A DNA stretch of 63,886 bases, filler included, from Octopus bimaculoides (Eukaryota): the NCBI RefSeq assembly GCF_001194135.2. It is 10 parts of 9 records of this genome, joined end to end, with 100 filler letters (N's around TTAATTAATTAA, not from the genome) between each part and the next. Parts side by side here need not be neighbours in the genome. Positions count along the whole stretch, not along the records: positions 10,993 to 20,669 come from NC_068986.1; 9 more parts are not named here. One strand, 5' to 3'. The notes beneath the pieces were generated by a model that was given only the letters and a program-made list of their open reading frames with translations, was not told where the DNA came from and made no database searches. The position numbers and the translations under genes were made by a program. Of the stretch, positions 5,355-20,170 are shown in pieces. Position 1 is the first letter of the stretch; every line of letters begins with the position of its first letter.

Positions 5355-6823
5355 GGTAATACTAGTGGAAATAGTATAGTGAAGAGACAACACATCTGTG
5401 GGCTAGGGGTTGGAGTACACTGGCCAGTGACTTCATGCCAATTAGTCAGTTGATCTTTTTCTCTGTGAGAGATCTAAACTCTGTAAAGAGAAGGTAGTTG
5501 TCAGAAGCTGAAGTATGTTCTGACCTTGAACAAACTGTAAGATAACAGAGAGATTCTCAGTGAGAAAAAAAATCTCAAAATCAATAAGCCAGCTTACTGA
5601 GTCATTTGGCATGTTCAATATAGAAGTCAAAGCTTTTTAGAAAATTTTCTAATAGCTTTAAAATAGTAATTACATGAGTCAAGGAGGGAATTCTTTTCAT
5701 AATTAAATTGGTCAATATTAAAATTAAATCAACCTCAATAAAATTTAGTGATGTTTTAAAAATCAAGACCATAAAAACAAGCAAGAAGGATACTGTGTAG
5801 TCAGACTATTCTAAGCAGCAGTCAAATCTCTCTCAACAAACACATTTCCCATTTTTAAAATTATAGCCATAGGATTCAGTGAGGAATCTCTTTGTAGGCA
5901 CTCAGCAGAAAAATTTCCTTCAATATTTTACCCATTATCTTTGACCATTTTCCTTTTTCTGCTATATTTCTAATGAAATTTCTTCTCATGTGTTTCAATT
6001 AAATTTGAAAATAATCAAGAATCTGGAGGAATTTAATAAACTAACTTTTATTATTATCCTTATTATTATTAAAACTGTTTATAAACTGAACAAAAGATTC
6101 TTACATAAAATTGTAATAAGAGATTTTAATTTAAGTAAAGCTCATTAAAAGAGGCATTTTTGAATCACAAAATCAAAGTGGGGTCTCAGGAGGGTTGATA
6201 TCAAAATGGTTATTTTAGCATCTTTTTTTTAAAAAATTAGGACAGCATTTCCCACAGCAAAAAAAAGAATGGCTTTTGCTAGAGACACACAATGACTATT
6301 CTGTTCATTTAATTATATACAACATAAACGTAGTTGTATATAAGGAAAACTGGTCAACAACTATGTGTATAAATTTTTCTCTATAGCTTTTTGAAACATC
6401 AAAAGGTCATCTATCAGGCTCTTAAGTAGGTCTAACCATATCTGACAAGTACTGTAGAACATATGTATGCAAAATACTGTGGCTACCATATAATTCACTT
6501 CATAAACTAACCTAAAAACTGTACTTTCTCAAAAAATTAGCATTTGAGAAAAAGAATTTATAATTACTCTTTAAAAATGAAACTGAAAAAAGAATACCAA
6601 ATGAAAGTTTCAAAAAATCCTATCAAGTTAACCTTTTAAAAAACCCAAGGTTTATCTTAACACCATTTTCCTAAAATTCTGTTGAACACAATCTGAGGGC
6701 AACAAATAAACCTCATTCACATGCATTATGCAATGGAAAGCCTGAAGAAATCACAGTCAACCAAACCAGCATGCAAGGTGTTCACACTGAATTGAGTTTA
6801 GAGCAGTAAGCTAACTGTTTATA

Positions 6824-6861
<38 letters not shown>

Positions 6862-6982
6862 AACAAACACACATACACATAAAAAAATTACTTGAGTGAC
6901 AAGCAGAACAGGTTTCTCAAGTGAGTTAAGATCAGAAATAAAGAAATGAAGGAGAATGAGAAATCAAGCAGAGGATCCTTAC

Positions 6983-6997
6983 CCCAGTCCAGGTCAT
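6983..6997 (-). CDS. Candidate 15-nt phase 1-1 microexon of the AFTPH-like gene
   Basis: Minus: ttattttccctccatcccAG|ATGACCTGGACTGGG|GTAAGG. Strong acceptor and donor, length a multiple of 3. Spliced to the last exon it reads x-D-L-D-W-V-FESEL with no stop. No transcript evidence. Confidence 0.5.
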
Positions 6998-7419
6998 CTG
7001 GGATGGAGGGAAAATAAGGTGAATTCAGTAAAAGGATTATTGATTTGACAAACAATCAAAATACTTGGATGTTTAATTCCAGAAAGCTCAATATAGTATC
7101 ATAAGGACAAATTAAATTTATGATGAAATTAGCAAACATTCACACAGTGAAACCAAAATGTGTTTGTAATTTTTCTTCTCTTTTTTGGGGTTTTTTTTTT
7201 CTTTCTCAGATATCATAAATTCAAACATCAACCATAATGTCTCATGTTTGTTTTGCAATAGGTGGCATCATAGTTTTCACATGTCTGCAAATTATATTTT
7301 GCCATTTACCTCAGTCCTACATGACACTGACTATAAGGTCCAACATCCCTTCGTTCTGACCTCACATACTTTTTCAATATATTTTCTTGATCTTCTTCTG
7401 GCACAAATAATCATAATTT

Positions 7420-7800
7420 TGGTTTCAAATTCAGGGAGGAGGTAAGTAAATGACACTGACCCAAGTGCTTGACTGGTACTTATTTTATCGACCCTGAAAG
7501 GATGAAAGGCAAAGTCAGCCTCAGCAGAATTTGAACACAGAGTGTAAAAGATGGACGAAATGTCATTAAGCATTTTGCCCTGGGTGCTAACAATTCTGCC
7601 ACCTCATTGCCTTTCAGATAATAGTAATTTTGAATTCTAGCATCGGCAGAAATCCCTGAGATTAAATCAATCTCAGCTCTTGACTGACCCTTTATTTTAT
7701 TGATGTTGGAGGGGTGAAGGATAAGATTGATCTCAACAAAAATTTGATTTAAAACCTAATGGATCATAACTAAATACCACAAGGCATTTTATCCAGCACT
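7420..7800 (-). mobile_element. Two family-A SINE copies (second heavily decayed)
   Basis: ttatcgaccctgaaaggatgaaaggcaaagtcagcctcagcagaatttgaac core. Confidence 0.8.
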
Positions 7801-8302
7801 AATGATTTTACTGATACACCACCCTAGCAGTTAATTACAATTTTGTCAGATTCTTTTATTTGCTTCTCTTACAATAATCATATTAAACATATTGAAGAAA
7901 ATCCTAATATTTCACATCCATTAAGTGATATACGCACCAGTAAATTCCTGTCACACCACATTCTCACTTTTAGCTCTCTACTCCATAAAGACTGCTTCAG
8001 CCCTCAGTCATACATTACAAGAATCCACTCAACTAAGATTTATCATATGAGTGTGTGTGTGTTTGTGTGTCTGTGTGAAACTGAGATGTTCGTGCCTATA
8101 TACATATTATATATATATATATATACATAAAGGGTGTATATATATATATAAAAGTAAATGTAGGGATAAACAAATTACTGATTTGTCTAACTTGTTTATC
8201 CCTACATTTACTTCTATACCCACTCAAGTTTAAATCTTTTGAGCACTACTAAGTGTATTCTATATTGAAAATATCTGACTCTCATCTATGAACTATATGT
8301 GC

Positions 8303-8401
<99 letters not shown>

Positions 8402-8631
8402 ATGCTAGTGTTAAACAACTGAGATATCATGTCATCATTTATGTATAAACACTTTAATATTGGGTGATTTTAAGACAGTTGCTCTTATATTAAAAGGGTT
8501 AACAAAAAAAATTTCACCTTACTATTAATGAATTTGGTATTTTTGCAATGCTCTCCATTAACCAATTGATTGCAATTTTGACCTTTATAGAAATTATTGT
8601 CATATGTTGGTACAAGCATGTTATAGTCTCA

Positions 8632-8791
8632 GGCACAGAGACAGATAATGTGGTTAAGAAGTTCAATTCACAACAACAGGGCTTGGGGTTCAGACCCACT
8701 CTACAGCACCTTTGGTCACTATCTTCTACTGCCTCAAGTCAATGCCTTATGAGCGAATTTGATAGACAGAAACTGTGGGAAGCCTGTGTGT

Positions 8792-8822
<31 letters not shown>
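8632..8822 (+). mobile_element. Decayed tRNA-headed SINE (family C) 5' half followed by (TG)n
   Basis: tgtggttaagaagtt A-box-like and ggttcagacccac B-box-like motifs, ending gacagaaactgtgggaagcc(tg)n. Confidence 0.6.
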
Positions 8823-8824
<2 letters not shown>

Positions 8825-9401
8825 GACATACGCTTGCATGTATGTGTGTTACTATCTACACTCATGCACCATGGGCAGCAGTACCACCATTGCCTGGCAA
8901 CAAATCATCTGCTCATCTCACTCTGAAAACATACAAAACAAAAGATCCTCTGACCCCAAAACAGAAGAGGGACAGTCACCGGAAGGGATTCTGGCTGCAA
9001 AACAATGTCCCACAATACACTTGTTCAACCCATGCCAGCATGGAAAAAGGCATGCAAATCAAATGAATCAGTCAATGTAAGTTTAATGTAAGGAACACAC
9101 ATACACAAACATATAGATGAATGCGTGTAAATAAACATGTATATACACATACACACACATGTAAATACATACATATACATATAGACTCAATCATAATTTA
9201 AAAGTAACATAATCTAAAACAAACACAAAATGTAGCAATGCAGATTTATAGAACTAAAGAGTATATAAAAAAAAAAATCGGTAACATATACGACACACAT
9301 CATCTCAAAACCCATCTCAAAACCTTATGTTCTAACCAACTGGTAATGGTGTAATATCAATCAAACTTTTGTTTGTTTATATTATATTTGTCTATTATAG
9401 A

Positions 9402-9590
9402 AGTGGAAGTGTGTGATTTAGTGATTAGGGGTGTTGGACTTATGATTGTGAAATTGTGGTTCCAGTCCACTCAGCTGGCAAAAAATGAGTAACCCTGTGA
9501 CAGACCAGCATCCCGTCCAGGTGGGGAATTTATATGCCACAGGAACTGGGAAACTGACCCTATGAATCTATATGACTTTGGAAGGATCTT
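9402..9590 (+). mobile_element. Decayed tRNA-headed SINE (family D)
   Basis: tttagtgattaggggtgttggac head, then ccagtccactcagctg and ccctgtgacagaccagcatcccgtccagg body. Confidence 0.55.
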
Positions 9591-10723
9591 CATCCTTTTC
9601 TCTTTTTTTATTCTATTACAGTAATGTAACAGGGTAACGCTCTTAATAGGATAAGTAGGGAGGAAGATGAGAGAAAGTGAGATAAAAATAAAATTAAAAA
9701 GGGGGAAGATGAAAGAAAAGAAGATAAAGAAAAACAATATAAAATACAATAAAAATAGTAGTAAAAAAAGGTTTAATTTCTTCAATAGGTTAATGGACGT
9801 AAAATTTTTTTTTGTTCAGGGATACACACAGACACATACACACTTATTCATACACACACATTCATTCACACATATATAAAATTTATATTTATATTTTTAT
9901 TCCCATTATCTTCCTCCCTGCTAATGGCATTACCTTCTTATCTTATTAAAATCCAACCATGTTCCCTGAGACACCAACCCACTGCCCTTGTCTCTTATAC
10001 TTTACTTTTTAATAACTAACAGAGGCAGAGGTTGCTTTTACCATTTTATTTGGGAACTTTAGAGGCTTTTGTTTTTGTTTTCTGGAGGTGGTATTTTTTT
10101 TTTTTTTTGCTAATTTGGCATGTTATATGTATTTTGTTTTGCATTTTTTTTTGTGGTGGTTAACTGCAAGTCCTTCCTACAAATAATCACTCCAGTGAAG
10201 CAAAACAAAATCCTACTTGGAATTTAGACTGAAGGAAACAGAGTAATGTGTACTGTAGAGGAATGTAACAGAAAGGTTTGAACTTTAGCCTGGCTATAAT
10301 ATTGAATAGTCCCTTACCTTATCCTGCAAACGATTATACTTCCCATTTCCCCATTATTTTAAGCATATATATATATATATATATATAGTAAAATCAGCAA
10401 TCTGAGCAAACTGGTGGTATGCGTCAGCCAAAATTAATCAATAAAAGAGTTTGCAGTAGTTTAGTGAGCTAATTTGTCAAGAGGAATGAAAGAGTCGAAC
10501 ATTTGCCCAACATCCAAGACAAAAACAGAGACAGAGAATTTATAAAAAGTGTTGTCTCACTCACTCACACACATCCCTTTAATTAGGTGATGACTATTTT
10601 TCAGCAAAACAAATCAAGGCACTTGCTTAAAAGTAGCAATAGCTATATCAAGTTTAGAAGGGCTAAAACACAGAATTTAACTTCTCACCTAGTGAGAAAG
10701 GGGAAGGAGAGAGAGAGGGAGAG

Positions 10724-10809
<86 letters not shown>

Positions 10810-10936
10810 TACATGCATATATACATATACATTAATACACACACACACACACATACATATATACATATACATTAATACACACACACACACACNNNNNNNN
10901 NNNNNNNNNNNNNNNNNNNNNNNNNNNNNNNNNNNN

Positions 10937-10948
10937 TTAATTAATTAA
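10937..10948. other. Assembly gap spacer TTAATTAATTAA between N runs (also near 20714, 42538, 50658, 54309, 56600, 58681, 59993, 62820)
   Basis: Identical 12-mer embedded in N blocks nine times; it encodes stops in all six frames. Confidence 0.95.
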
Positions 10949-11116
10949 NNNNNNNNNNNNNNNNNNNNNNNNNNNNNNNNNNNNNNNNNNNNTTACTGTT
11001 AATACTTCATTTAGAGAATTAACATTGCTTGTTTTCACCTTTTCGATATCAGTGAAGAATTTCACTGGAAAAGAAGATATAAGATTGCCAGGTTTTTGTC
11101 TCTCTCACCAAGGTCA

Positions 11117-11175
11117 GCAGCTGTCGGACGCCGACGAAGGGAAATAACCCTGAAATCCGGATACGTTCGTGCTGC
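11117..11175 (+). ncRNA. Type I hammerhead ribozyme motif (U4C variant)
   Basis: GCAGC-tgt-CGGACG [CCGACGA] AGGG-aaataa-CCCT [GAAA] TCCGGA-T-A | CGTTCG-t-GCTGC. All three stems pair, stem III is the palindrome ATCCGGAT, and predicted cleavage is after A11163. Confidence 0.75.
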
Positions 11176-11365
11176 AGATGTTGGTGAGAGGGATAACTTC
11201 CCTTGGCAAACAGGACACAGTCGTGTGTCGATAAGCCAGCTGGAGGAGATGTCCTCCTGGGGCTAAAAGCAACAGTAACATCCACCCCTAGGGGTCAGCC
11301 ACACTTAAGTGGCAATATACTACACTTTATCGTCCGATTTTAACAGTTATTTTTTTAAAGCTATA

Positions 11366-11642
11366 ATGGAAATGGCAAAGGAGCATATTCGGTATATATT
11401 GCTTTATGAGTTCAATAAAGCAACATCGCAACGGAAAGTGCCAGGAATATTAATGGAATGTATGGGGATCGGACAATAAGCGTAAGCCAGTGTCAAGCGT
11501 GCTTCCAGAAATTCCGAACTGGAAACTACATCCTACAAGATGAGCCTCGTGCTGGGAGATCTGAAAAAGACACTGAGGACGTCCTGCAAACCCAGATGGA
11601 ACCAAATTGCATCGTAACTGTTGAAGAAGTAGCAGAGAAGCT
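11366..11642 (+). pseudogene. Mariner transposase N-terminal (HTH) fragment, frameshifted and truncated
   Basis: MEMAKEHIRYILLYEFNK / (1-nt deletion) ATESARNINGMYGDRTISVSQCQACFQKFRTGNYILQDEPRAGR...VTVEEVAEKL, resembling the Hsmar1/Mos1-type N-terminus. Confidence 0.85.
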
Positions 11643-11997
11643 ACCAAAAAGAATGCATAAATCGAATTTAACCTCAGACGTATGTCTAAATTGAATTTAA
11701 CCTCAGACGTAAGGACAGTTGTGAAGCAAAGAGGAACTGACAGGCATGTAAGGGTTGTGCATTCGAGCAGAGCCATACGTTTATATATGCGCTTAAGGTG
11801 TAGGTAAGAGCAAGTTCATTCATGTGTGTCTGTGTCGCTGGATGTACGTGGTCTGAGTGCAAGTATGCCTGGGTATATATACGTCTTAGCGTGAGAGTGT
11901 AAGACATTGTGTACGTGTGGACATGTTGATGTAAGTAGACGTGTTAGGTGGGAATAAGTTGGAGAGGCTGTATGCGTATCCATGGGTGTAAGCGATA

Positions 11998-12166
11998 TGA
12001 GGGGTATGAATTGGCCTAGGCGATAATATACCAGGGTTATAATCTAACATAGGTTCTTTTAACCCCGGGTATAGCCCGAACTAGGGGTATACTCTGCCCT
12101 TGTTACACCAGGAGTTAATTTAAGCACGTTCTAAGAATAAACGGCTCGACAAGTTTGAAACCATTC
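11998..12166 (+). repeat. Duplicate of the Ginger-end/maT junction at 14306-14460
   Basis: ggggtatgaattggccta...ttaaccccgggtatagcccgaactaggggtatactct..ccttgttacaccag.agttaatttaagca.gttctaagaa.aaacggctcgaca occurs at both sites. Confidence 0.9.
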
Positions 12167-12387
12167 AACTTATGGTAATGTCATTGGATAACGAATATGA
12201 TTTATAAAAATAAAGAATAAACATATTTAAAGTCATTTTTGTATTCAATTATTGCTGACATTAGTGGATAATGAAATAATAGACAAAAAGCAAACATAAG
12301 AATTCTACATTATAAGACTGAGATATCTACATAGAAATATAATCTAAAACAGGCTATTTGTGTATTTTTGTAACGTCACTGAACGAT

Positions 12388-12726
12388 GAGACCCCCTTCG
12401 GTTATGACTGACCATGGGATTGCGCCTAGAAAGTTACCCTCCCAGGCACAAGCCCGGGCAAGGTTGTTTATGGAAGACGAACAGTCGCCCATGCATACCA
12501 GCCTCCCCTCTCCACGCCACTGATGTTATCCAAGGGAAAGGCAAAGGGGCCGATACAGCTTGGCACCTGTGACGTCGCAACTCATTTCTACAGCTGAGTG
12601 AACTGGAGCAACGTGAAATAAAGTGTCTTTGCTCAAAAATACAACTGGCAGCCTGGCTTGGGGTTCTAACTCACAACTCCACGATCGTAAGCTCGACGCT
12701 CTAACCACTGAGCCATGCGCCTTCAC
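12388..12726 (-). mobile_element. Near full-length tRNA-headed CORE-like SINE (family B)
   Basis: Minus head GTGAAGGCGCATGGCTCAGTGGTTAGAGCGTCGAGC (A box), B-box-like region, core and 3' tail; CpGs retained. Confidence 0.9.
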
Positions 12727-13337
12727 TGATAACTAAAGAATAAAACATAAAAATAAGAATTCTACTTTATGATTAATAGAAAGTTACAACAATTAGTTAT
12801 TTATTTATTCATTATATTAAACCTTTTATAAGAAATGACTTTATTATATACAGCGAACTCCATAAAGATTTACCCATGTTTAAAACTCTTCCTAAAGAAT
12901 ACCGATGCAGTTAATATCTACATTTTACATAAAGATTTGCATATGTCTTTTGTTCATGTATCTGTCGTTTCGTTCGTCTATAATAGGTTTATAAACAAAC
13001 ATGGTGTCAAAAGCAAAACGTCACCAGATTGTTGCCTTAAAAATAGCTGGAGTGAGCATCACGGACATAACTAAACAATTAAATGTGCGCCGTAAAGCAG
13101 TGTTCAATACCTGGAAACTATATATAGAGTCCGCTACTACCTCTAGCTCTAGCAAGCCACCTTCTGGTAGGGATCGATCAATTCGTACCAAATAACCTGA
13201 TGGGTCTTTGAAGAAGGAATGAACCGATATTCCCGCAGGAGTGCAAGAAAAACTGCAAAAGCCCTTGATATTTCGAAATCGTCAATGCACAGGATTTTAA
13301 AGAGGACTTAAATCTAACTGCATACAAGAAACAATCC

Positions 13338-14402
13338 CTTGCTGATTGTCCCAGTGACTCTGCCAATGACAGCCCAAAGCAAAAGACACTCAAAAGATCA
13401 TGTGAAGAACCAGACAACGATGACATCTGCATCTCACAGAAATACAAGCAGACCAAGACTTTCAACTCACAAACAGGTTCAGGGAGGGAGTATCATAGCA
13501 CCACTCTTGGCTTTACGTTTGATAAGGATGTGTACTATGGATGCACAAGGGACCTTCGACAACCACGGCATACATATAAAACCAAAGGTGACGGGAACTG
13601 CTACTTCCGGGCCATCAGCTACATCCTGTCAGGATCAGAGGACAGCCATTTCCTTCTCAGAGATAAAGTCATCCACCACATGAAAACCGGCATGACAAAA
13701 AACTACAGGACTACTTGAAATAAGATGTGAATGAATATGTGAGCAACTCTGGCATCTCTCGTGATGGAGTCTGGGCAACCGATGTAGAAATCATGGCCAC
13801 AGTGAATCTGTTGAAATGCTCTGGCGACAAGGTCATCCGCACAAAAGTAGTTCATGGATCAGTTGACCTATTCCGCAAGCTTGAATCTGCTATCAACAAC
13901 AGAACATTGCACTTTATCTTGAAAACAAGCATGATCATTTTGATGTTATCAGTGTTTAACATTGAACATTTATATTGTAGCAAGGTTTTGATAGTTTTAG
14001 AAATTGAAGTTTCTGGACGTTATGACTATTATTATATTATGAAAAGTAAAATTAATTGAACATTATGTCATAATTGCATTATAATGTTTTTGGGTAAGTG
14101 CTTTTATTTTGAATGTGTAAATACTACTGAGAAGTGTGGTAGCAATCTTTGATCTTTGTGGAAGTCTAATATTTTTACTGATTGAAATTTTTCTCCACTT
14201 AACTTACCTGACAAAGCTGAACCCCCGAATAAATTGTTGAAAGATTAAATAATTCTGGTGTATATCACTCAACACTACTGATATCATGGGGGTATAATCT
14301 GGCCTGAGGGGTATGAATTGGCCTACCATGGTTATAATCTAGCCTAGGCTCTTTTAACCCCGGGTATAGCCCGAACTAGGGGTATACTCTGGCCTTGTTA
14401 CA
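13338..14402 (+). mobile_element. 3' portion of a Ginger1-like DNA transposon with OTU domain and right TIR
   Basis: Interrupts the maT ORF, encodes OTU motifs, and ends in internally repetitive ggggtataatctggcc-type units and TGTTACA (5'-TGT terminus) followed by CCAG (CCGG-derived). The left end is missing. Confidence 0.7.
13530..13959 (+). pseudogene. OTU-like cysteine protease domain, frameshifted
   Basis: KTKGDGNCYFRAISYILSGSEDSHFLLR (Cys loop), GVWATDVEIMAT, and in another frame ALYLENKHDHFDVISV* (His loop). Confidence 0.8.
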
Positions 14403-16824
14403 CCAGCAGTTAATTTAAGCAGGTTCTAAGAAGAAACGGCTCGACAGGGTTGAAACCATGTTAGCTGAGATGAAGTGCACCGCTAACAATGTTTTGATCT
14501 GGTCCGATGAGAAGATCTTCACCTTGGAGGCAGTTACCAATAGTCTTCGAAGTATTGGTAGCTAGGTCACTACTCTCAATTATTCCTCCCCCCCCCCCAC
14601 TATAACCTCTACTAACCTCTTAATGACAGGCGTTATGCACGTAATGCAGGAAAATAGACCTGCCCGAATATGCCAGGAGTCATTTACACCGTCAGAAGCC
14701 AGCTTCATTCATTGTGTGGGCTGCACTTGCATCTCATGTATCGAAGTCTCCCTTGATCTTCATTGATGCTGGCATCAAAATCAACAGTGACGTTAGTGTA
14801 CGCAGAAATCTTTGGTCAACGTTACAACTTCACTCAAGATAGGGTTCCGACTCACACATGTAATTTGACACGGAAGTTGTGCAAAGAGTATTTGAGCGGT
14901 TTGGGGGACAAAGCAATATGGCCACCTTGATGTCAAGACATTAATCCTATAGATTTTTCTACCTAGCCCATCTTAAATAGTAATGTTTTTGGTTGCTCCT
15001 ATTCAAATGTGGCAGATCTGAAAAAAGCCCTTCAATCTTCATGGGTCAAATTTCATGAAGATGTGGTACGGCGCTAGCACAACTCACTGACCACTCGTTT
15101 CCAGGCTATGATCAAGGCAGAAGGTGGTCATTTTGAAGTTTGTCTATAGCAATGAATTGACAATTTACCTCTAACGTCGCAATACGAGTGGCCCCGATCG
15201 CTCCCTTCGATCATTGCCTCGTCGTGAACGGAGACCGACGGATGACGCGCGGACGAGGCCATTTTCCATCATTCCATGCTTTTCGTATGCAAGCCGGCGG
15301 GGCTCGCTCTGAGCACTCTAATTTTTTCACAGTGAACGTACCGGCCGCCTCGGACACTCGGCGAAGAGCACCCTCGGAGGAACCGTGCGGGCCGAAACGA
15401 CCGGGAGGTGGACGCGCTACCGAAACGTGTGTGCCAAATTTCATTATCGTACCTTTAGTTTATTTTGAATAATTAAGAAATATCAATAGGTAAATCATTC
15501 TGTAGTCGTCCTGTAATAAATGAAAAATTATTATGATTAANNNNNNNNNNNNNNNNNNNNNNNNNNNNNNNNNNNNNNNNNNNNNNNNNNNNNNNNNNNN
15601 NNNNNNNNNNNNNNNNNNNNNNNNNNNNNNNNNNNNNNNNNNNNNNNNNNNNNNNNNNNNNNNNNNNNNNNNNNNNNNNNNNNNNNNNNNNNNNNNNNNN
15701 NNNNNNNNNNNNNNNNNNNNNNNNNNNNNNNNNNNNNNNNNNNNNNNNNNNNNNNNNNNNNNNNNNNNNNNNNNNNNNNNNNNNNNNNNNNNNNNNNNNN
15801 NNNNNNNNNNNNNNNNNNNNNNNNNNNNNNNNNNNNNNNNNNNNNNNNNNNNNNNNNNNNNNNNNNNNNNNNNNNNNNNNNNNNNNNNNNNNNNNNNNNN
15901 NNNNNNNNNNNNNNNNNNNNNNNNNNNNNNNNNNNNNNNNNNNNNNNNNNNNNNNNNNNNNNNNNNNNNNNNNNNNNNNNNNNNNNNNNNNNNNNNNNNN
16001 NNNNNNNNNNNNNNNNNNNNNNNNNNNNNNNNNNNNNNNNNNNNNNNNNNNNNNNNNNNNNNNNNNNNNNNNNNNNNNNNNNNNNNNNNNNNNNNNNNNN
16101 NATATATATATATATATATATATACACAAAAGATACACAGGTAGACATACACACAAATGTATATATAGATTTATATTATACTATTTTATATACCATATAT
16201 ATATATCTGTAATATAAATGTGCAGCAAAGATGTACAGATGTCAATTCATTACAGCCGTTTCAAACGACTTTTTTAATTGATTAATGAAAACATTAGAAA
16301 ACCATTTTAGGCAGATGACTACATAGACTTCTAACACAAGGGACCAACCAACTGCTTTAACATATTCGTATCACCAACCGGGGCTCAAATATTTACATTG
16401 ATTCTGCTGCTATTTCTTTGGTAGAATGAGCTTAGAAAGTAGTTTATGTACTGTCAAACCATCAGGAATTAAGAGGTTGGTAGAGAATATAGTGGGGGGG
16501 GGGATAATTGAGAGTAGTGACCCAGCTACCAACACTTCGAAGACAATAGTGAGAATGTAGTCTTCAGTTATCCAAAATTAAATATTCTGGGAGTTGTAGC
16601 TATATTCTAGACAAAGGTGATAAATTAATTAGTATCATGACAATCTACTAGACCTTCTAAGTACTGGAACATTATATCTGGCTTTGTCTACACCAATGGG
16701 TAAGGCTTGGGGTGATAAAAATAGAATACTTGATAGGGAAGAAGTGATAATTGTAAGAAAATAGGAAATATATATTATGTATATCTGTAAAGTGATTATT
16801 CCATCATCAGAGTGAGAGAGAGAG

Positions 16825-16865
<41 letters not shown>

Positions 16866-17495
16866 AGGTTAAACATATGTAACAGCAGGATAAAAGTCCC
16901 TCATCAATGATAATGGTCGTGATTCCGTAAGTCCAGGGAGGGCGGGGATATCCAAACAAGCCCGGTTATATCCAGTGAGATTGGGTATTCGTTACGTAAA
17001 TACATGGTGGATTGTAATAAAAAATATAAAAAGAAAAATGCACTAAAACTTAGCCATACGTACATTATATATATATATATATATNNNNNNNNNNNNNNNN
17101 NNNNNNNNNNNNNNNNNNNNNNNNNNNNNNNNNNNNNNNNNNNNNNNNNNNNNNNNNNNNNNNNNNNNNNNNNNNNNNNNNNNNNNNNNNNNNNNNNNNN
17201 NNNNNNNNNNNNNNNNNNNNNNNNNNNNNNNNNNNNNNNNNNNNNNNNNNNNNNNNNNNNNNNNNNNNNNNNNNNNNNNNNNNNNNNNNNNNNNNNNNNN
17301 NNNNNNNNNNNNNNNNNNNNNNNNNNNNNNNNNNNNNNNNNNNNNNNNNNNNNNNNNNNNNNNNNNNNNNNNNNNNNNNNNNNNNNNNNNNNNNNNNNNN
17401 NNNNNNNNNNNNNNNNNNNNNNNNNNNNNNNNNNNNNNNNNNNNNNNNNNNNNNNNNNNNNNNNNNNNNNNNNNNNNNNNNNNNNNNNNNNNNNN

Positions 17496-17530
<35 letters not shown>

Positions 17531-17602
17531 ATATATGTATATATATATATCAAAAATTTAAATGAGAGTTTTGACGCTAATATCCATTATTATTGAAGTG
17601 TA

Positions 17603-17690
17603 TTACCTATGTCAACATTTCTGTAAAAGGTTATATTTAACTGTCAATTCAAGTTAAATAAGTAAATTACGTTACACATCCTCAGGGTAA
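17603..17690 (-). ncRNA. Type I hammerhead motif in the inverted pLTR
   Basis: TTACC [CTGAGGA] TGTGTAA..long stem II..TTTTACA [GAAA] TGTTGACA-T-A | GGTAA; identical to the right-arm copy. Confidence 0.65.
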
Positions 17691-18135
17691 AAAGTAAAAA
17701 GTAAACACCAGAAATATAATCTCTAAGTCTGATTCATATTCAAATTCCTCCTTAAATAAAAGTCCGTCTAAGGGAGAAAACCCTCATAATATTATTAATT
17801 ATAAACAATCAAGTATTAAAAATTATGGATTCTTGGTAATAGATTCTAAACCAATCGAAATCTATATTATATTATATCTAGAAACTTTAGTTATTATTGG
17901 TAAATTATACATTAATATACCCTGCCTTTAAACCTAATATTATACTATAATACCCGATCATACTGAAATGTATAATTTATTTAAACCAGTAAAATGTATG
18001 TCTAAGATAATGGCTACATCTGAAAGCATTGTATGTGAGTTTATTTATTAACTTACCCTTAGAGAATAATATAAAATATAATTCTAGATTACACAGCGAG
18101 CAATATCTCTTACCTTTGTTATAAGGGAAATATTT

Positions 18136-18790
18136 GACATTAGATATTAAAAATGAGATATATAGACCATATCATAAACCTTCCACTAACCTAAAATATA
18201 TAAGTAAGTGGAGTAATCATCCTAGAAAAATTATCGATAATTTACTAAGAAATATTTCATTAAGATTTTCTAGATTATCTGCAAATGATAGGATTTTTGA
18301 TAATGAAGCTCAATTCTATAATTCGGCATTAAGTAGGGCAGGATACAAAGAGAAGGTTTACTATGTTAAACCTGATCGTAACAACATTAAGACATATAAG
18401 AATAATAGGTATAAGAATAAGGTAAGCGGAAATAAGGAAAATAAACACAGAGATATTCATAAACGTAACATAGGTAATTTAAAATTTTTAAAGAATTATG
18501 CTAATGACTGTGATAACACTAAAGGTGATAATATATGGTTCATAGTCCCTTTTGGTAGAAATGTTAAATGTAATTTGATTGCACAGTTTAGAGAGGTGAT
18601 AAGTAGATATTTCCCAAAGAATTCACACTATGGTAAAATTATTAACACACATAGCATTAGGTTTGGTTTCTCAAACACTATGAACTTAGCCCAAATAATT
18701 GCAGCCCATAATTTTAAAATACTTAAATCAAAGGGAATCGGGAAGGATAGTGATGAGAACCTTGATATAAATAATAATAATAATAACAAT
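18136..18790 (+). pseudogene. Penelope RT thumb/linker fragment
   Basis: TLDIKNEIYRPYHKP..YISKWSNHP..NISLRFSRLS..IWFIVPF..YFPKNSHYGKIINTHSIRFGFSNTMNLAQIIAAHN; colinear with 63048-63886. Confidence 0.9.
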
Positions 18791-18866
18791 CAGCACATAC
18801 CCAAGGCGCACAGAGCTGCGCTCGGTAGTGAAGTGAAAGCACGTTATAAAAATAAAACTACTGAAC
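18791..18866 (+). mobile_element. 76-nt insert between two (AAT)n tracts, probable 3' end of an (AAT)n-targeting LINE
   Basis: Unique sequence bracketed by AAT runs (18771-18790 and 18867-18929) that terminates the Penelope ORF. The R4/Dong assignment is inference. Confidence 0.5.
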
Positions 18867-18929
<63 letters not shown>

Positions 18930-18935
18930 CGTACT

Positions 18936-19434
18936 ATGATTACAGTAACAGAGATTAACCCCAGAAGATTGAAGTTTGACGGCCCAAATGTGAGAATGAA
19001 GAATGTAGTTTATCAATGTAAGGTAAAGACTCAGACAGATGTTAGCCTATACGTGGGGTGTTCTTCGGGACAAATCTGTAGAAGAATATCTAACCATTAT
19101 AGTACCTTTNNNNNNNNNNGTGGGGTGTTCTTCGGGACAAATCTGTAGAAGAATATCTAACCATTATAGTACCTTTAGAGATAGAAGTAAAATAGCGAGT
19201 ACTAGTCTTAGTAAATTCATTTGGGAACTGAAAGAACGAAAAAAGCAATATTCGTTAGAATGGTCAATTATTGGGAAATCTTTCCCTTATGACACAGGTA
19301 AGAGATATTGCTCGCTGTGTAATCTAGAATTATATTTTATATTATTCTCTAAGGGTAAGTTAATAAATGAACTCACATACAATGCTTTCAGATGTAGCCA
19401 TTATCTTAGACATACATTTTTCTGGTTTAAATAA
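18936..19434 (+). pseudogene. Penelope GIY-YIG endonuclease (spans a 10-N gap with duplicated flanks)
   Basis: NVVYQCKV..LYVGCSSGQICRRISNHYSTF..STSLSKFIWELK..WSII..PYDTGKRYCSLCNLE..RCSH*. Confidence 0.9.
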
Positions 19435-19744
19435 ATTATACATTTCAGTATGATCGGGCATTATAGTATTATATTAGGTTTAAAGGCAGGGTATATCAAT
19501 GTATAATTTACCAATAATAATAAAATTGTATTTGTGTTTCTTTACTACAGTTTCTAGAGATAATATAATATAGATTTCGATTGGTTTAGAATCTATTACC
19601 AAGAATCCATAATTTGTGATACTTGATTGTTTATAATTGATAATATTATGAGGGTTTTTCCCCTAAGACGGACTTTTATTTAAGGAGGAATTTGAATATG
19701 AATCAGACTTAGAGATTATATTTCTGGTGTTTACTTTTTACTTT

Positions 19745-19832
19745 TTACCCTGAGGATGTGTAACGTAATTTACTTATTTAACTTGAATTGACAGTTAAAT
19801 ATAACCTTTTACAGAAATGTTGACATAGGTAA
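19745..19832 (+). ncRNA. Type I hammerhead motif in the 3' pLTR
   Basis: Same motif with an intact CUGANGA/GAAA/UH core, 5-bp stem I, near-palindromic stem III (ATGTTGACAT) and internal hairpin TATTTAACT/AGTTAAATA in stem II. Confidence 0.65.
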
Positions 19833-20025
19833 TAAACTTCAATAATAATGGATATTAGCGTCAAGACTCTTATTTAAATTTTTGATACATAACCAAGGAG
19901 ATCGATCCATAAGGAGTCTACTATAGACCTTTGGGGAGAAATTTTGGCTATTTTGGTTACGATTACATGTTTATCTCACCAATACATTGTGGAGATATCA
20001 TTATACGAACATATATACATATATA

Positions 20026-20056
<31 letters not shown>

Positions 20057-20170
20057 NNNNNNNNNNNNNNNNNNNNNNNNNNNNNNNNNNNNNNNNNNNN
20101 NNNNNNNNNNNNNNNNNNNNNNNNNNNNNNNNNNNNNNNNNNNNNNNNNNNNNNNNNNNNNNNNNNNNNN

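What the first reader, a model, noticed from the sequence alone, without database searches (positions are those of the whole stretch)
13338..14406. OTU-deubiquitinase-encoding Ginger1-like transposon end inserted at CCGG inside a maT transposase
Seen: the maT frame stops at ..AYKKQS(tcc c) and resumes after TGTTACA|CCAG with cag tta att.. (Q-L-I). Removing the insert restores TCC-CGG-CAG (S-R-Q), i.e. a CCGG site. The insert carries the OTU GDGNC and HFDV motifs and an internally repetitive TIR. Established, from memory: Ginger1 elements have 5'-TGT termini, 4-bp TSDs favouring CCGG, and C-terminal accessory domains including OTU. Inference: an octopus Ginger1 family carrying a deubiquitinase-like domain.
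Basis: partly seen in the sequence, partly recalled or inferred. Interest (0 to 1): 0.7.

Follow-up and report, generated by a model that had tools for sequence, protein, structure and literature searches.

The report
Dead Ginger1 transposon end in maT
A broken 1.06-kb tail of a Ginger1 cut-and-paste transposon, carrying a decayed OTU protease domain and a repetitive inverted-repeat end, sits inside a dead maT (Tc1/mariner) transposon; it is an ordinary nested-transposon relic of a known family type.

Summary
Window 13339-14402 is foreign to the surrounding maT-type (DD37D) transposase pseudogene. An uninterrupted copy of that maT element in the Octopus bimaculoides genome joins the two flanks exactly at this point.

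The insert carries:
- a frameshifted OTU cysteine-protease domain (Pfam OTU, 33 bits);
- about 300 bp of untranslated sequence;
- a roughly 130-150 bp terminal repeat built of GGGTATAnTCTGGCC units, ending in TGTTACA.

Relatives from public assemblies are 75-92% identical in DNA. In them the OTU domain is the C-terminus of a Gypsy-type integrase (H2C2, rve/DDE, GPY). These elements have inverted termini (TGTAGCA...TGTTACA) and no reverse transcriptase. Their flanks read CCGG in 6 of 8 independent ends, CTGG in one and CCAG in one. This matches the published definition of Ginger1.

The correction: at this locus the target reads CCAG, and the empty paralog also reads CCAG.

The copy lacks its integrase and 5' end, and the deletion starts at the insertion site. 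A 166-bp duplicate of the same junction lies at 11997-12162.

Verdict: a new member of a known kind, of low interest.

The parts
12851..15513 (+). Host element: one complete but dead maT-type (DD37D Tc1/mariner) transposon copy, TA|CAGCGAAC...GTCGTCCTG|TA. It is interrupted by the Ginger1 fragment and by two smaller inserts.
   Evidence: Imperfect ~28-bp inverted ends with TA on both sides. Homology to the O. bimaculoides copy L009 across 12859-15502. Homologs P0018-P0022 (alignment).
13001..13338 (+). maT transposase pseudogene, N-terminal HTH part, ending ...AYKKQS just before the insert.
   Evidence: Weak Pfam HTH matches, all below the curated cut-offs: HTH_23 24.3 bits (cut-off 24.6), HTH_7 22.3 (23.8), HTH_29 20.2 (28.1). 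57-61% identity to P0018.
13339..14402 (+). 5'-truncated Ginger1 fragment (left edge ambiguous within 13332-13338): transposase C-terminal remnant, 3' untranslated region and 3' terminal inverted repeat.
   Evidence: blastn to L001, L002 and L005-L007 at 75-92% identity, starting at 13332/13344 and ending at 14404. Absent from the empty-site paralog L009.
13339..13959 (+). Remnant of the transposase C-terminus: linker plus OTU cysteine-protease domain (OTU about 13587-13959). Broken by three frameshifts (~13697, ~13850, ~13908) and a TAA at 13721-13723. Catalytic Cys at 13599-13601, His at 13936-13938.
   Evidence: Pfam OTU 33.1 bits. tblastn of P0001 in three frames. Alignment A4.
13960..14254 (+). 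3' untranslated region of the Ginger1 element.
   Evidence: DNA homology to L001, L002 and L005 downstream of the stop codon.
14255..14402 (+). 3' terminal inverted repeat. It holds about five GGGTATAnTCTGGCC-type units, partly arranged as ~33-bp palindromes, and ends ...GGCCTTGTTACA (reverse complement TGTAACA = TGTNR).
   Evidence: Unit clusters. Same terminus in L002, L003/4, L005-7, L008 and L012. Inverted partner seen in L001, L004 and L008.
14403..14406 (.). Target-site copy CCAG, which is host (maT) sequence. The left copy is reduced to CC at 13337-13338 or lost.
   Evidence: L009 has a single CCAG at the joined site. Relatives have CCGG, CTGG or CCAG here.
14407..15168 (+). maT transposase pseudogene, catalytic part (IWSDEKIF..., FTQDRVP..., DINPIDF). 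It contains an extra 78-bp insert at 14544-14621.
11997..12162 (+). Second, partial copy of the same Ginger-end/maT junction: 110 bp of terminus, CCAG, then 51 bp of maT. It is 93% identical over 136 nt to 14324-14459 and lies outside the main maT copy.
   Evidence: the repeat finder family D4. Alignment.

Best explanation
Window 13339-14402 is the dead 3' third of a Ginger1 DNA transposon. Ginger1 is a cut-and-paste element whose transposase is a Gypsy-type DDE integrase with a C-terminal OTU cysteine protease.

Inferred history:
1. A full element of about 4 kb integrated into a maT (DD37D) transposon copy between the codons for S/P and Q of ...YKKQ(S/P)|QQLIS... The target was the 4-bp site CCAG, one base away from the family's preferred CCGG.
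2. Its 5' inverted repeat, its integrase and about two thirds of its length were later lost. The deletion runs from the insertion site itself into the linker upstream of the OTU domain, across a TCCC microhomology. This fits failed excision, or end-joining after cleavage at the 5' end.
3. The OTU reading frame then decayed (three frameshifts, one stop).

What remains cannot move by itself. In active relatives, the repeated GGGTATAnTCTGGCC units in both inverted ends are the likely transposase-binding sites. The OTU domain keeps its Asp-Cys-His residues, which suggests a working deubiquitinase-type activity whose role in transposition is unknown.

Shown: the foreignness and exact 3' edge of the insert, the OTU identity, the integrase-OTU fusion, the inverted ends and CCGG flanks in relatives, and the CCAG empty site.
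Inferred: the order of events, the deletion mechanism, the binding-site role of the units, and the activity of the OTU domain.
For: - Empty site: the O. bimaculoides maT paralog L009 joins window 13338 to 14403 with no maT base missing.
- OTU: Pfam 33.1 bits. A profile of 16 relatives hits human OTUD1 (4bop) at 2.6e-9. D-G-N are invariant and the Cys is present in at least 90% of the 16 sequences.
- Fusion to integrase: P0001, P0004, P0006, P0008/9 and P0016 carry the integrase tail RMGSK(M/L)EPRW.GPY... directly upstream of the OTU domain in one ORF.
- Integrase domains: rve scores 35.1 bits in the same-family copy L005; Integrase_H2C2 scores 25.0 bits (cut-off 25.5) in L001.
- Inverted ends: L008 is 86% identical over 124 aligned bp, L004 82% over 152 bp. 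A 5' end of palindromic units lies upstream of the integrase in L001.
- No RT or RNase H gene is called between the ends in L004.
- Flanks of 8 independent ends: CCGG x6, CTGG x1, CCAG x1, with unrelated sequence beyond the 4 bp.
- Paired flanks: CCGG/CCGG for L008 and CCGG/CTGG for L004.
- Published Ginger1 definition: TIR 40-270 bp, TSD CCGG 75% or CCGT 24%, TGTNR ends, GPY/F motif, OTU or Ulp1 domain, 2.6-7 kb (PMC2836005).
- Microhomology at the left edge.
Against: - The window holds only the OTU third and one end. Integrase, 5' end and paired duplication are seen only in relatives that are 75-92% identical in DNA, not at this locus.
- The target here is CCAG, a class that accounts for about 1% or less of Ginger1 sites in Bao et al.
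- CCGG is its own reverse complement. In paired relatives it could formally be part of the inverted repeat rather than a duplication. Only the window/L009 comparison shows that the 4 bp belong to the host.
- The YPYY motif could not be identified in the decayed N-termini.
- The same junction occurs twice in the window (11997-12162), which a single insertion plus decay does not explain by itself.
Confidence: 0.9

Rival explanations
1. The maT copy with its Ginger fragment is itself one member of a composite, multi-copy non-autonomous element. After the Ginger insertion and truncation, the whole unit kept being moved in trans by maT transposase. The 166-bp junction copy at 11997-12162 would be the wreck of a second such copy. 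This adds to the main explanation rather than replacing it.
For: - The identical Ginger-end|CCAG|maT junction occurs twice, 93% identical, and the second copy lies about 690 bp outside the main maT copy.
- The main maT copy still has both inverted ends and TA flanks.
Against: - The only other copy of this maT family that could be fetched (L009) has no insert.
- The second junction copy is only 166 bp with unrelated flanks, so a local segmental duplication explains it equally well.
- No further copies could be searched with the tools at hand.
Confidence: 0.3
2. The insert is the 3' end of a Gypsy-type LTR retrotransposon whose Pol ends in an OTU domain. TGTTACA would then be the end of a 3' LTR.
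For: - The integrase is Gypsy-like (rve, H2C2, GPY/SH3 tail).
- LTRs also end in ...CA and start with TG.
Against: - In L004, L008 and L001 the two ends are inverted, not direct.
- In L004 no RT or RNase H gene is called in the 4.7 kb between the ends.
- L008 is a 1.8-kb internally deleted derivative that keeps both inverted ends, as DNA transposons do.
- The flanks show a 4-bp CCGG preference.
Confidence: 0.03
3. The OTU stretch is an exon of a host OTU or GIN1-like domesticated gene, or an OTU carried by a Helitron, and lies next to an unrelated repeat.
For: OTU domains occur in host deubiquitinases and in some animal Helitron proteins (PMC2836005).
Against: - The reading frame is broken (three frameshifts, one stop).
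- The stretch is continuous in DNA with the 3' UTR and terminus in five other loci that have different flanks.
- It is fused to an integrase, not to a Rep/helicase.
- The ends are TGT...ACA inverted repeats, not Helitron TC...CTRR ends.
Confidence: 0.02

Closest known systems
Ginger1 DNA transposons with a C-terminal OTU domain (Bao, Kapitonov & Jurka 2010, PMC2836005), e.g. Ginger1-1_AC of the gastropod Aplysia californica (4,336 bp, 140-bp TIR, OTU) and Ginger1-1/-2/-3/-11_HM of Hydra
   Same: - Gypsy-type integrase with H2C2, DDE and GPY, followed by an OTU domain in one ORF.
- Inverted ends of about 125-150 bp that start TGTNR.
- 4-bp CCGG-type flanks.
- Total length of about 3.9-4.7 kb in the full relative L004.
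- Internally deleted non-autonomous derivatives (L008).
   Different: - This copy is a 5'-truncated relic.
- Its target is CCAG rather than CCGG or CCGT.
- The inverted ends are built from repeated ~15-bp units arranged partly as ~33-bp palindromes. Whether published Ginger1 families share this was not checked, because no Repbase sequences were available.
- Sequence similarity to the named families was not measured.
Ginger2/TDD elements
   Same: Integrase-type transposase, TGTNR ends, inverted repeats, 4-5 bp duplications.
   Different: Ginger2 lacks the GPY/F motif and the extra C-terminal protease domain, and it targets AT-rich RTATAY sites (PMC2836005). Here GPY is present, an OTU domain is present, and the flanks are CCGG.
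maT family (DD37D) of Tc1/mariner: the host element
   Same: N-terminal paired HTH domains, the D...D(37)D spacing in both the window copy and P0018, TA flanks, about 1.2-1.3 kb once the inserts are removed.
   Different: Dead copy: stops, frameshifts, a deletion after ...KINSDV, and three nested inserts.
Human OTUD1, OTUD3 and OTUD5 catalytic domains (PDB 4bop, 4bou, 3pfy)
   Same: Best solved-structure matches of the family profile (E = 2.6e-9 to 2.4e-6). The DGNC...H motifs align.
   Different: Those are cellular deubiquitinases. Here the domain is the tail of a transposase, and its substrate is unknown.

Membership tests
Ginger1 | Transposase with a Gypsy-like integrase core (H2C2 zinc finger plus DDE/rve) | tested here: met
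   Not present in the window (deleted). In same-family relatives: rve 35.1 bits (cut-off 32.6) in the L005 composite, and Integrase_H2C2 25.0 bits (cut-off 25.5) in L001. The D, D and E motifs are readable in L003 and L005.
Ginger1 | GPY/F motif after the DDE core (absent in Ginger2) | tested here: met
   EPRW(V/I/T)GPY is present in P0001, P0004, P0008, P0009 and P0016. Weak SH3_Tf2-1 hits.
Ginger1 | YPYY motif upstream of the zinc finger | tested here: inconclusive
   The N-terminal regions of L001 and L004 are decayed or intron-split, and no clear Y/F-P-Y/F-Y/F could be assigned.
Ginger1 | Extra C-terminal OTU (or Ulp1) protease domain | tested here: met
   Pfam OTU 33.1 bits in the window remnant and 33.9-43.9 bits in relatives.
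Ginger1 | Terminal inverted repeats of about 40-270 bp; no LTRs and no RT | tested here: met
   The window has one end only. Relatives: L008 ends are 86% identical over 124 bp and L004 ends 82% over 152 bp, in inverted orientation. No RT or RNase H gene is called between the ends of L004.
Ginger1 | Termini 5'-TGTNR | tested here: met
   Window 3' end in reverse complement is TGTAACA. 5' ends are TGTAGCA (L004, L008) and TGTAACA (L012).
Ginger1 | 4-bp target-site duplication, CCGG (75%) or CCGT/ACGG (24%) | tested here: inconclusive
   Relatives: 6 of 8 independent flanks are CCGG, and the paired flanks are CCGG/CCGG (L008) and CCGG/CTGG (L004). This locus has CCAG on the right and at most CC left on the left. 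The empty paralog has a single CCAG. So the family preference is met, but a duplication cannot be shown here and the site is a one-base variant.
maT (DD37D Tc1/mariner), host element | 37 residues between the second and third catalytic Asp, with a third Asp rather than Glu | tested here: met
   Counted by hand from FTQD...NP(I/M)DF in the window translation and in P0018. DDE_3 is weak (24.4 bits) in P0018. No phylogeny was made.

The most novel reading that the evidence does not exclude
This Ginger1-OTU lineage has spread horizontally between distantly related marine animals. Dead copies 75-92% identical in DNA to the window fragment turn up in at least six public assemblies: four ENA ERZ records and several JGI metagenome samples. 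Their host organisms could not be identified. These loci share no other repeat with the window or with the octopus locus.

A second, smaller possibility is that the maT::Ginger composite was itself mobilised as a unit by maT transposase.
Probability: 0.15. Interest if true: 0.35.

Novelty: new member of a known kind. Interest (0 to 1): 0.15.

Why it matters
It matters little beyond annotation.
- It adds a probable cephalopod family to the Ginger1 superfamily, which is sparse in molluscs. A bivalve-centred mollusc survey found 98 Ginger elements among 14,275 DDE/D elements (PMC10294476).
- It gives a clean example of nested transposons that can be dated relative to each other.
- The relatives gathered here show an inverted-repeat architecture of repeated ~15-bp units, and conserved catalytic residues in the OTU domain. 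Both could help anyone who wants to test what a deubiquitinase-type domain does for an integrase-type transposase, a question left open since 2010.

Tried and rejected
- Inverted partner of the terminus inside the piece: none found. My pattern was mistyped by one base, but blastn also found only the two direct copies.
- Rfam (E up to 0.01) and tRNA scans of the whole piece: nothing.
- Looking up a window ORF to find the source record: not on record.
- Identifying the host of sample ERZ26222911 through the intact LINE ORF of L003: only unnamed hits.
- Literature search for the sample accessions: nothing.
- JGI metagenome scan with the OTU alignment: 45 loci, but only one (L012) had a recognisable end of this family. 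The others are short or belong to more distant families.
- LTR-retrotransposon, host-gene and Helitron readings: rejected on structure (see rivals).
- Pfam on the ORFs at 18134-19434, which I had read as Penelope-like/GIY-YIG: no hit, so that label is unverified.
- My impression that the LINE fragment inside L002 looks teleost-like rests on memory only and was not testable.
Full report
**What is in the sequence**

The piece is eukaryotic, repeat-rich DNA. From 13001 a Tc1/mariner-type transposase pseudogene can be read: MVSKAKRHQIVALKIAGVSITDITKQLN..., then ...SSMHRILKEDLNLTAYKKQS, ending at 13337. The same frame resumes after 14402 as (Q)QLI*AGSKKKRLDRVETMLAEMKCTANNVLIWSDEKIFTLE... and goes on to FTQDRVPTHT...DINPIDF.

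The N-terminal part gives only weak Pfam HTH matches, all below the curated cut-offs (best: HTH_23, 24.3 bits against 24.6). The best homolog, P0018 (341 aa, from a Logan contig), is 57-61% identical over the whole length. The only named homolog is an Octopus bimaculoides protein (P0019).

Counting from the second Asp (FTQD) to the Asp of NP(I/M)DF gives 37 residues in both the window copy and P0018. That is the DD37D signature of maT. I did this count by hand and made no tree.

The copy has both ends: TA|CAGCGAAC at 12851 and GTCGTCCTG|TA at 15513.

**The insert is real and its 3' edge is exact**

Via P0019 I fetched its locus in the O. bimaculoides chromosome assembly (L009). It holds an uninterrupted copy of the same maT family:
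- window 12941-13338 aligns to L009 5548-5947 (79%);
- window 14400-14543 aligns to L009 5943-6086 (81%).

At the joint L009 reads AAACAACC-CCAG-CAGTAA. The window reads AAACAATCCC|...insert...TGTTACA|CCAGCAGTTA.

So 13339-14402 is an insertion, no maT base is missing, and the four bases after TGTTACA are host sequence. They read CCAG in four places: the window, the second junction copy (12108-12111), the empty paralog, and, as CCAAG, the distant L010.

The joined site is (T/C)CC-CAG-CAG. An ancestral CCGG that decayed at its CpG in every copy cannot be excluded, but it is not the economical reading.

**What the insert carries**

*Coding remnant, 13339-13959.* This is the C-terminal ~200 codons of a larger protein.
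- Pfam OTU scores 33.1 bits against a cut-off of 23.3.
- tblastn with the closest relative P0001 needs three frames and shows a TAA at 13721-13723. That means three frameshifts (~13697, ~13850, ~13908) and one stop.
- The catalytic D-G-N-C (Cys at 13599-13601) and H-F-D (His at 13936-13938) are still readable.
- In the alignment of 16 relatives, D-G-N are invariant and the Cys is present in at least 90%.
- The family profile hits human OTUD1, OTUD3 and OTUD5 among solved structures.

*Untranslated region, 13960-14254.* This is conserved in DNA with the relatives.

*Terminus, 14255-14402.* It is made of about five GGGTATAnTCTGGCC-type units and ends GGCCTTGTTACA.

**What the relatives show**

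The OTU peptide finds 17 proteins (E down to 2e-69), all from unannotated assemblies. In P0001, P0004, P0006, P0008/9 and P0016 the OTU domain follows, in the same ORF, the tail of a Gypsy-type integrase...RMGSKMEPRWVGPYTLV..., the GPY motif. I fetched their contigs and 45 further loci from JGI metagenomes.

| Locus | Identity to window | What it holds | Ends and flanks |
|---|---|---|---|
| L001 | 76-81% DNA | Decayed integrase and OTU | 5' block of the same palindromic units at 8683-8812, about 640 bp upstream of the integrase; no 3' end |
| L002 | 80-92% DNA | Integrase split by a LINE, OTU | 3' end ...GGCCTGTTACA\|CCGG |
| L005-L007 (one locus, three samples) | 79% DNA | Integrase (rve 35.1 bits), OTU | 3' end TGTTACA\|CCGG |
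| L004 (L003 is the same locus with an added LINE) | ~45% protein in the OTU region | Complete element, 6694-11419; no RT or RNase H gene called inside | CCGG\|TGTAGCAGCC...GGGCTGTTACA\|CTGG; ends 82% identical over 152 bp in inverted orientation |
| L008 | more distant | 1.8-kb internally deleted derivative | CCGG\|TGTAGCAGGCC...GGCCTGTTACA\|CCGG; ends 86% identical over 124 bp |
| L012 | 71% protein identity to the search query P0001 | 5' end close to the OTU region | 5' end CCGG\|TGTAACAGGCC |

Over eight independent ends the four flanking bases are CCGG six times, CTGG once and CCAG once. Beyond those four bases the flanks are unrelated.

**Comparison with the known family**

Bao, Kapitonov and Jurka (2010; PMC2836005) define Ginger1 by these features:
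- a 500-800 aa transposase whose first ~400 aa resemble a whole Gypsy integrase (YPYY, H2C2, DDE, GPY/F);
- an extra C-terminal OTU or Ulp1 domain;
- 40-270 bp inverted ends starting TGTNR;
- 4-bp duplications that are CCGG (75%) or CCGT/ACGG (24%);
- lengths of 2.6-7 kb.

They list an OTU-bearing family in the gastropod Aplysia.

Every feature I could test is met in the relatives. YPYY could not be assigned because the N-termini are decayed. Ginger2 is excluded by the GPY motif, the OTU domain and the GC-rich target. An LTR retrotransposon is excluded by the inverted ends, the absence of RT, and the short two-ended derivative.

One caveat applies. CCGG is palindromic, so in paired relatives it could formally belong to the inverted repeat. 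The filled/empty comparison in the window shows that the four bases are host DNA.

**History of this copy (inferred)**

The window copy lacks about 2.9 kb: the 5' end and the integrase. The left breakpoint falls on the insertion site itself. At most the AG of the left CCAG is gone, and no maT base is missing.

At the breakpoint, maT CAATCCC and the Ginger internal CAGTCCCC share a TCCC microhomology. A random later deletion would not be expected to start exactly at the element boundary. I therefore favour cleavage at the 5' end (attempted excision), followed by resection into the element and microhomology-mediated joining. This is an inference and no tool tests it.

**The unexplained second junction**

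The same Ginger-end|CCAG|maT junction occurs again at 11997-12162. It is 93% identical over 136 nt and lies about 690 bp outside the main maT copy. It must descend from the same insertion event.

Two readings fit: it is a local duplication, or the composite was moved as a unit by maT transposase (both maT ends are intact). Searching the source genome would decide between them, and I could not do that.

**How it works in active relatives (mostly inference)**

The integrase-type transposase would bind the repeated units in both ends, cut at TGT...ACA, and join into a 4-bp staggered cut at CCGG. The OTU domain, whose catalytic residues are conserved across families, probably acts as a deubiquitinase-type protease. 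Bao et al. speculate about a link to DNA repair after transposition. Nothing here tests that.

**Source and novelty**

The source is consistent with an octopus: the maT copy shows 74-98% DNA identity to an O. bimaculoides chromosomal copy. This is not proven. The hosts of the assemblies that hold the Ginger relatives are unknown. Horizontal transfer therefore remains an open but untested possibility.

The finding is a correct piece of annotation: a new, probably cephalopod, member of a family type described in 2010, present here as an immobile relic.

Noticed in passing
window 11997-12162: A 166-bp partial duplicate of the Ginger-terminus|CCAG|maT junction, 93% identical over 136 nt to 14324-14459, lying outside the main maT copy. 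It is either a local duplication or the remnant of a second composite copy.
   Followed up: partly
window 11365-11690: Fragment of a mariner (Mos1-type) transposase N-terminus: Pfam HTH_48 at 40.9 bits after bridging one frameshift. It is unrelated to the maT copy.
   Followed up: partly
window 12373-12726 (minus strand): A SINE-like insert whose head resembles a tRNA, with A-box-like TGGCTCAGTGG. It is flanked by similar AAGAATTCTAC(A/T)TTAT stretches at 12296-12313 and 12753-12770. ARAGORN and Rfam found nothing, so the label rests on reading the sequence only.
   Followed up: partly
window 14544-14621 and 16494-16547: A 78-bp insert in the maT copy that is absent from L009. An inverted copy lies 1.9 kb downstream (54 nt, 91% complementary). 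It is probably a small dispersed repeat or MITE.
   Followed up: no
window 15169-15423: A 255-bp GC-rich insert in the 3' part of the maT copy, absent from the O. bimaculoides paralog L009. No Rfam match; identity unknown.
   Followed up: no
window 17544-18142 and 19269-19891: Long inverted repeats (348 nt at 97% and 257 nt at 95%) bracket ORFs at 18134-19434. These ORFs read like a retroelement tail with a GIY-YIG-like motif (YVGCSSGQICRRISNH). Pfam gave no hit, so a Penelope-like identity is unverified.
   Followed up: partly
window 19053-19109 and 19120-19176: Two 57-bp stretches, 100% identical, on either side of a 10-N gap. This looks like an assembly artefact at a scaffold gap. Other N runs lie at 15541-16101, 17085-17495 and 20057-20170, inside TA/GT microsatellites.
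   Followed up: no
L003 1473-6671 (minus strand): An apparently intact 1,732-aa LINE ORF (endonuclease, RT, RNase H) inserted in the Ginger1 copy of L003, between its 5' end and its integrase. The otherwise identical locus L004 lacks it, so it is an insertion polymorphism or recent event in that unknown host.
   Followed up: partly
L002 979-2490: A LINE reverse-transcriptase tail (FKFLGVHISEDLSWTLNT...CTIESIL) splits the Ginger1 integrase of L002. From memory it resembles teleost LINEs. If so, the host of that sample may not be a mollusc. Not testable here.
   Followed up: no
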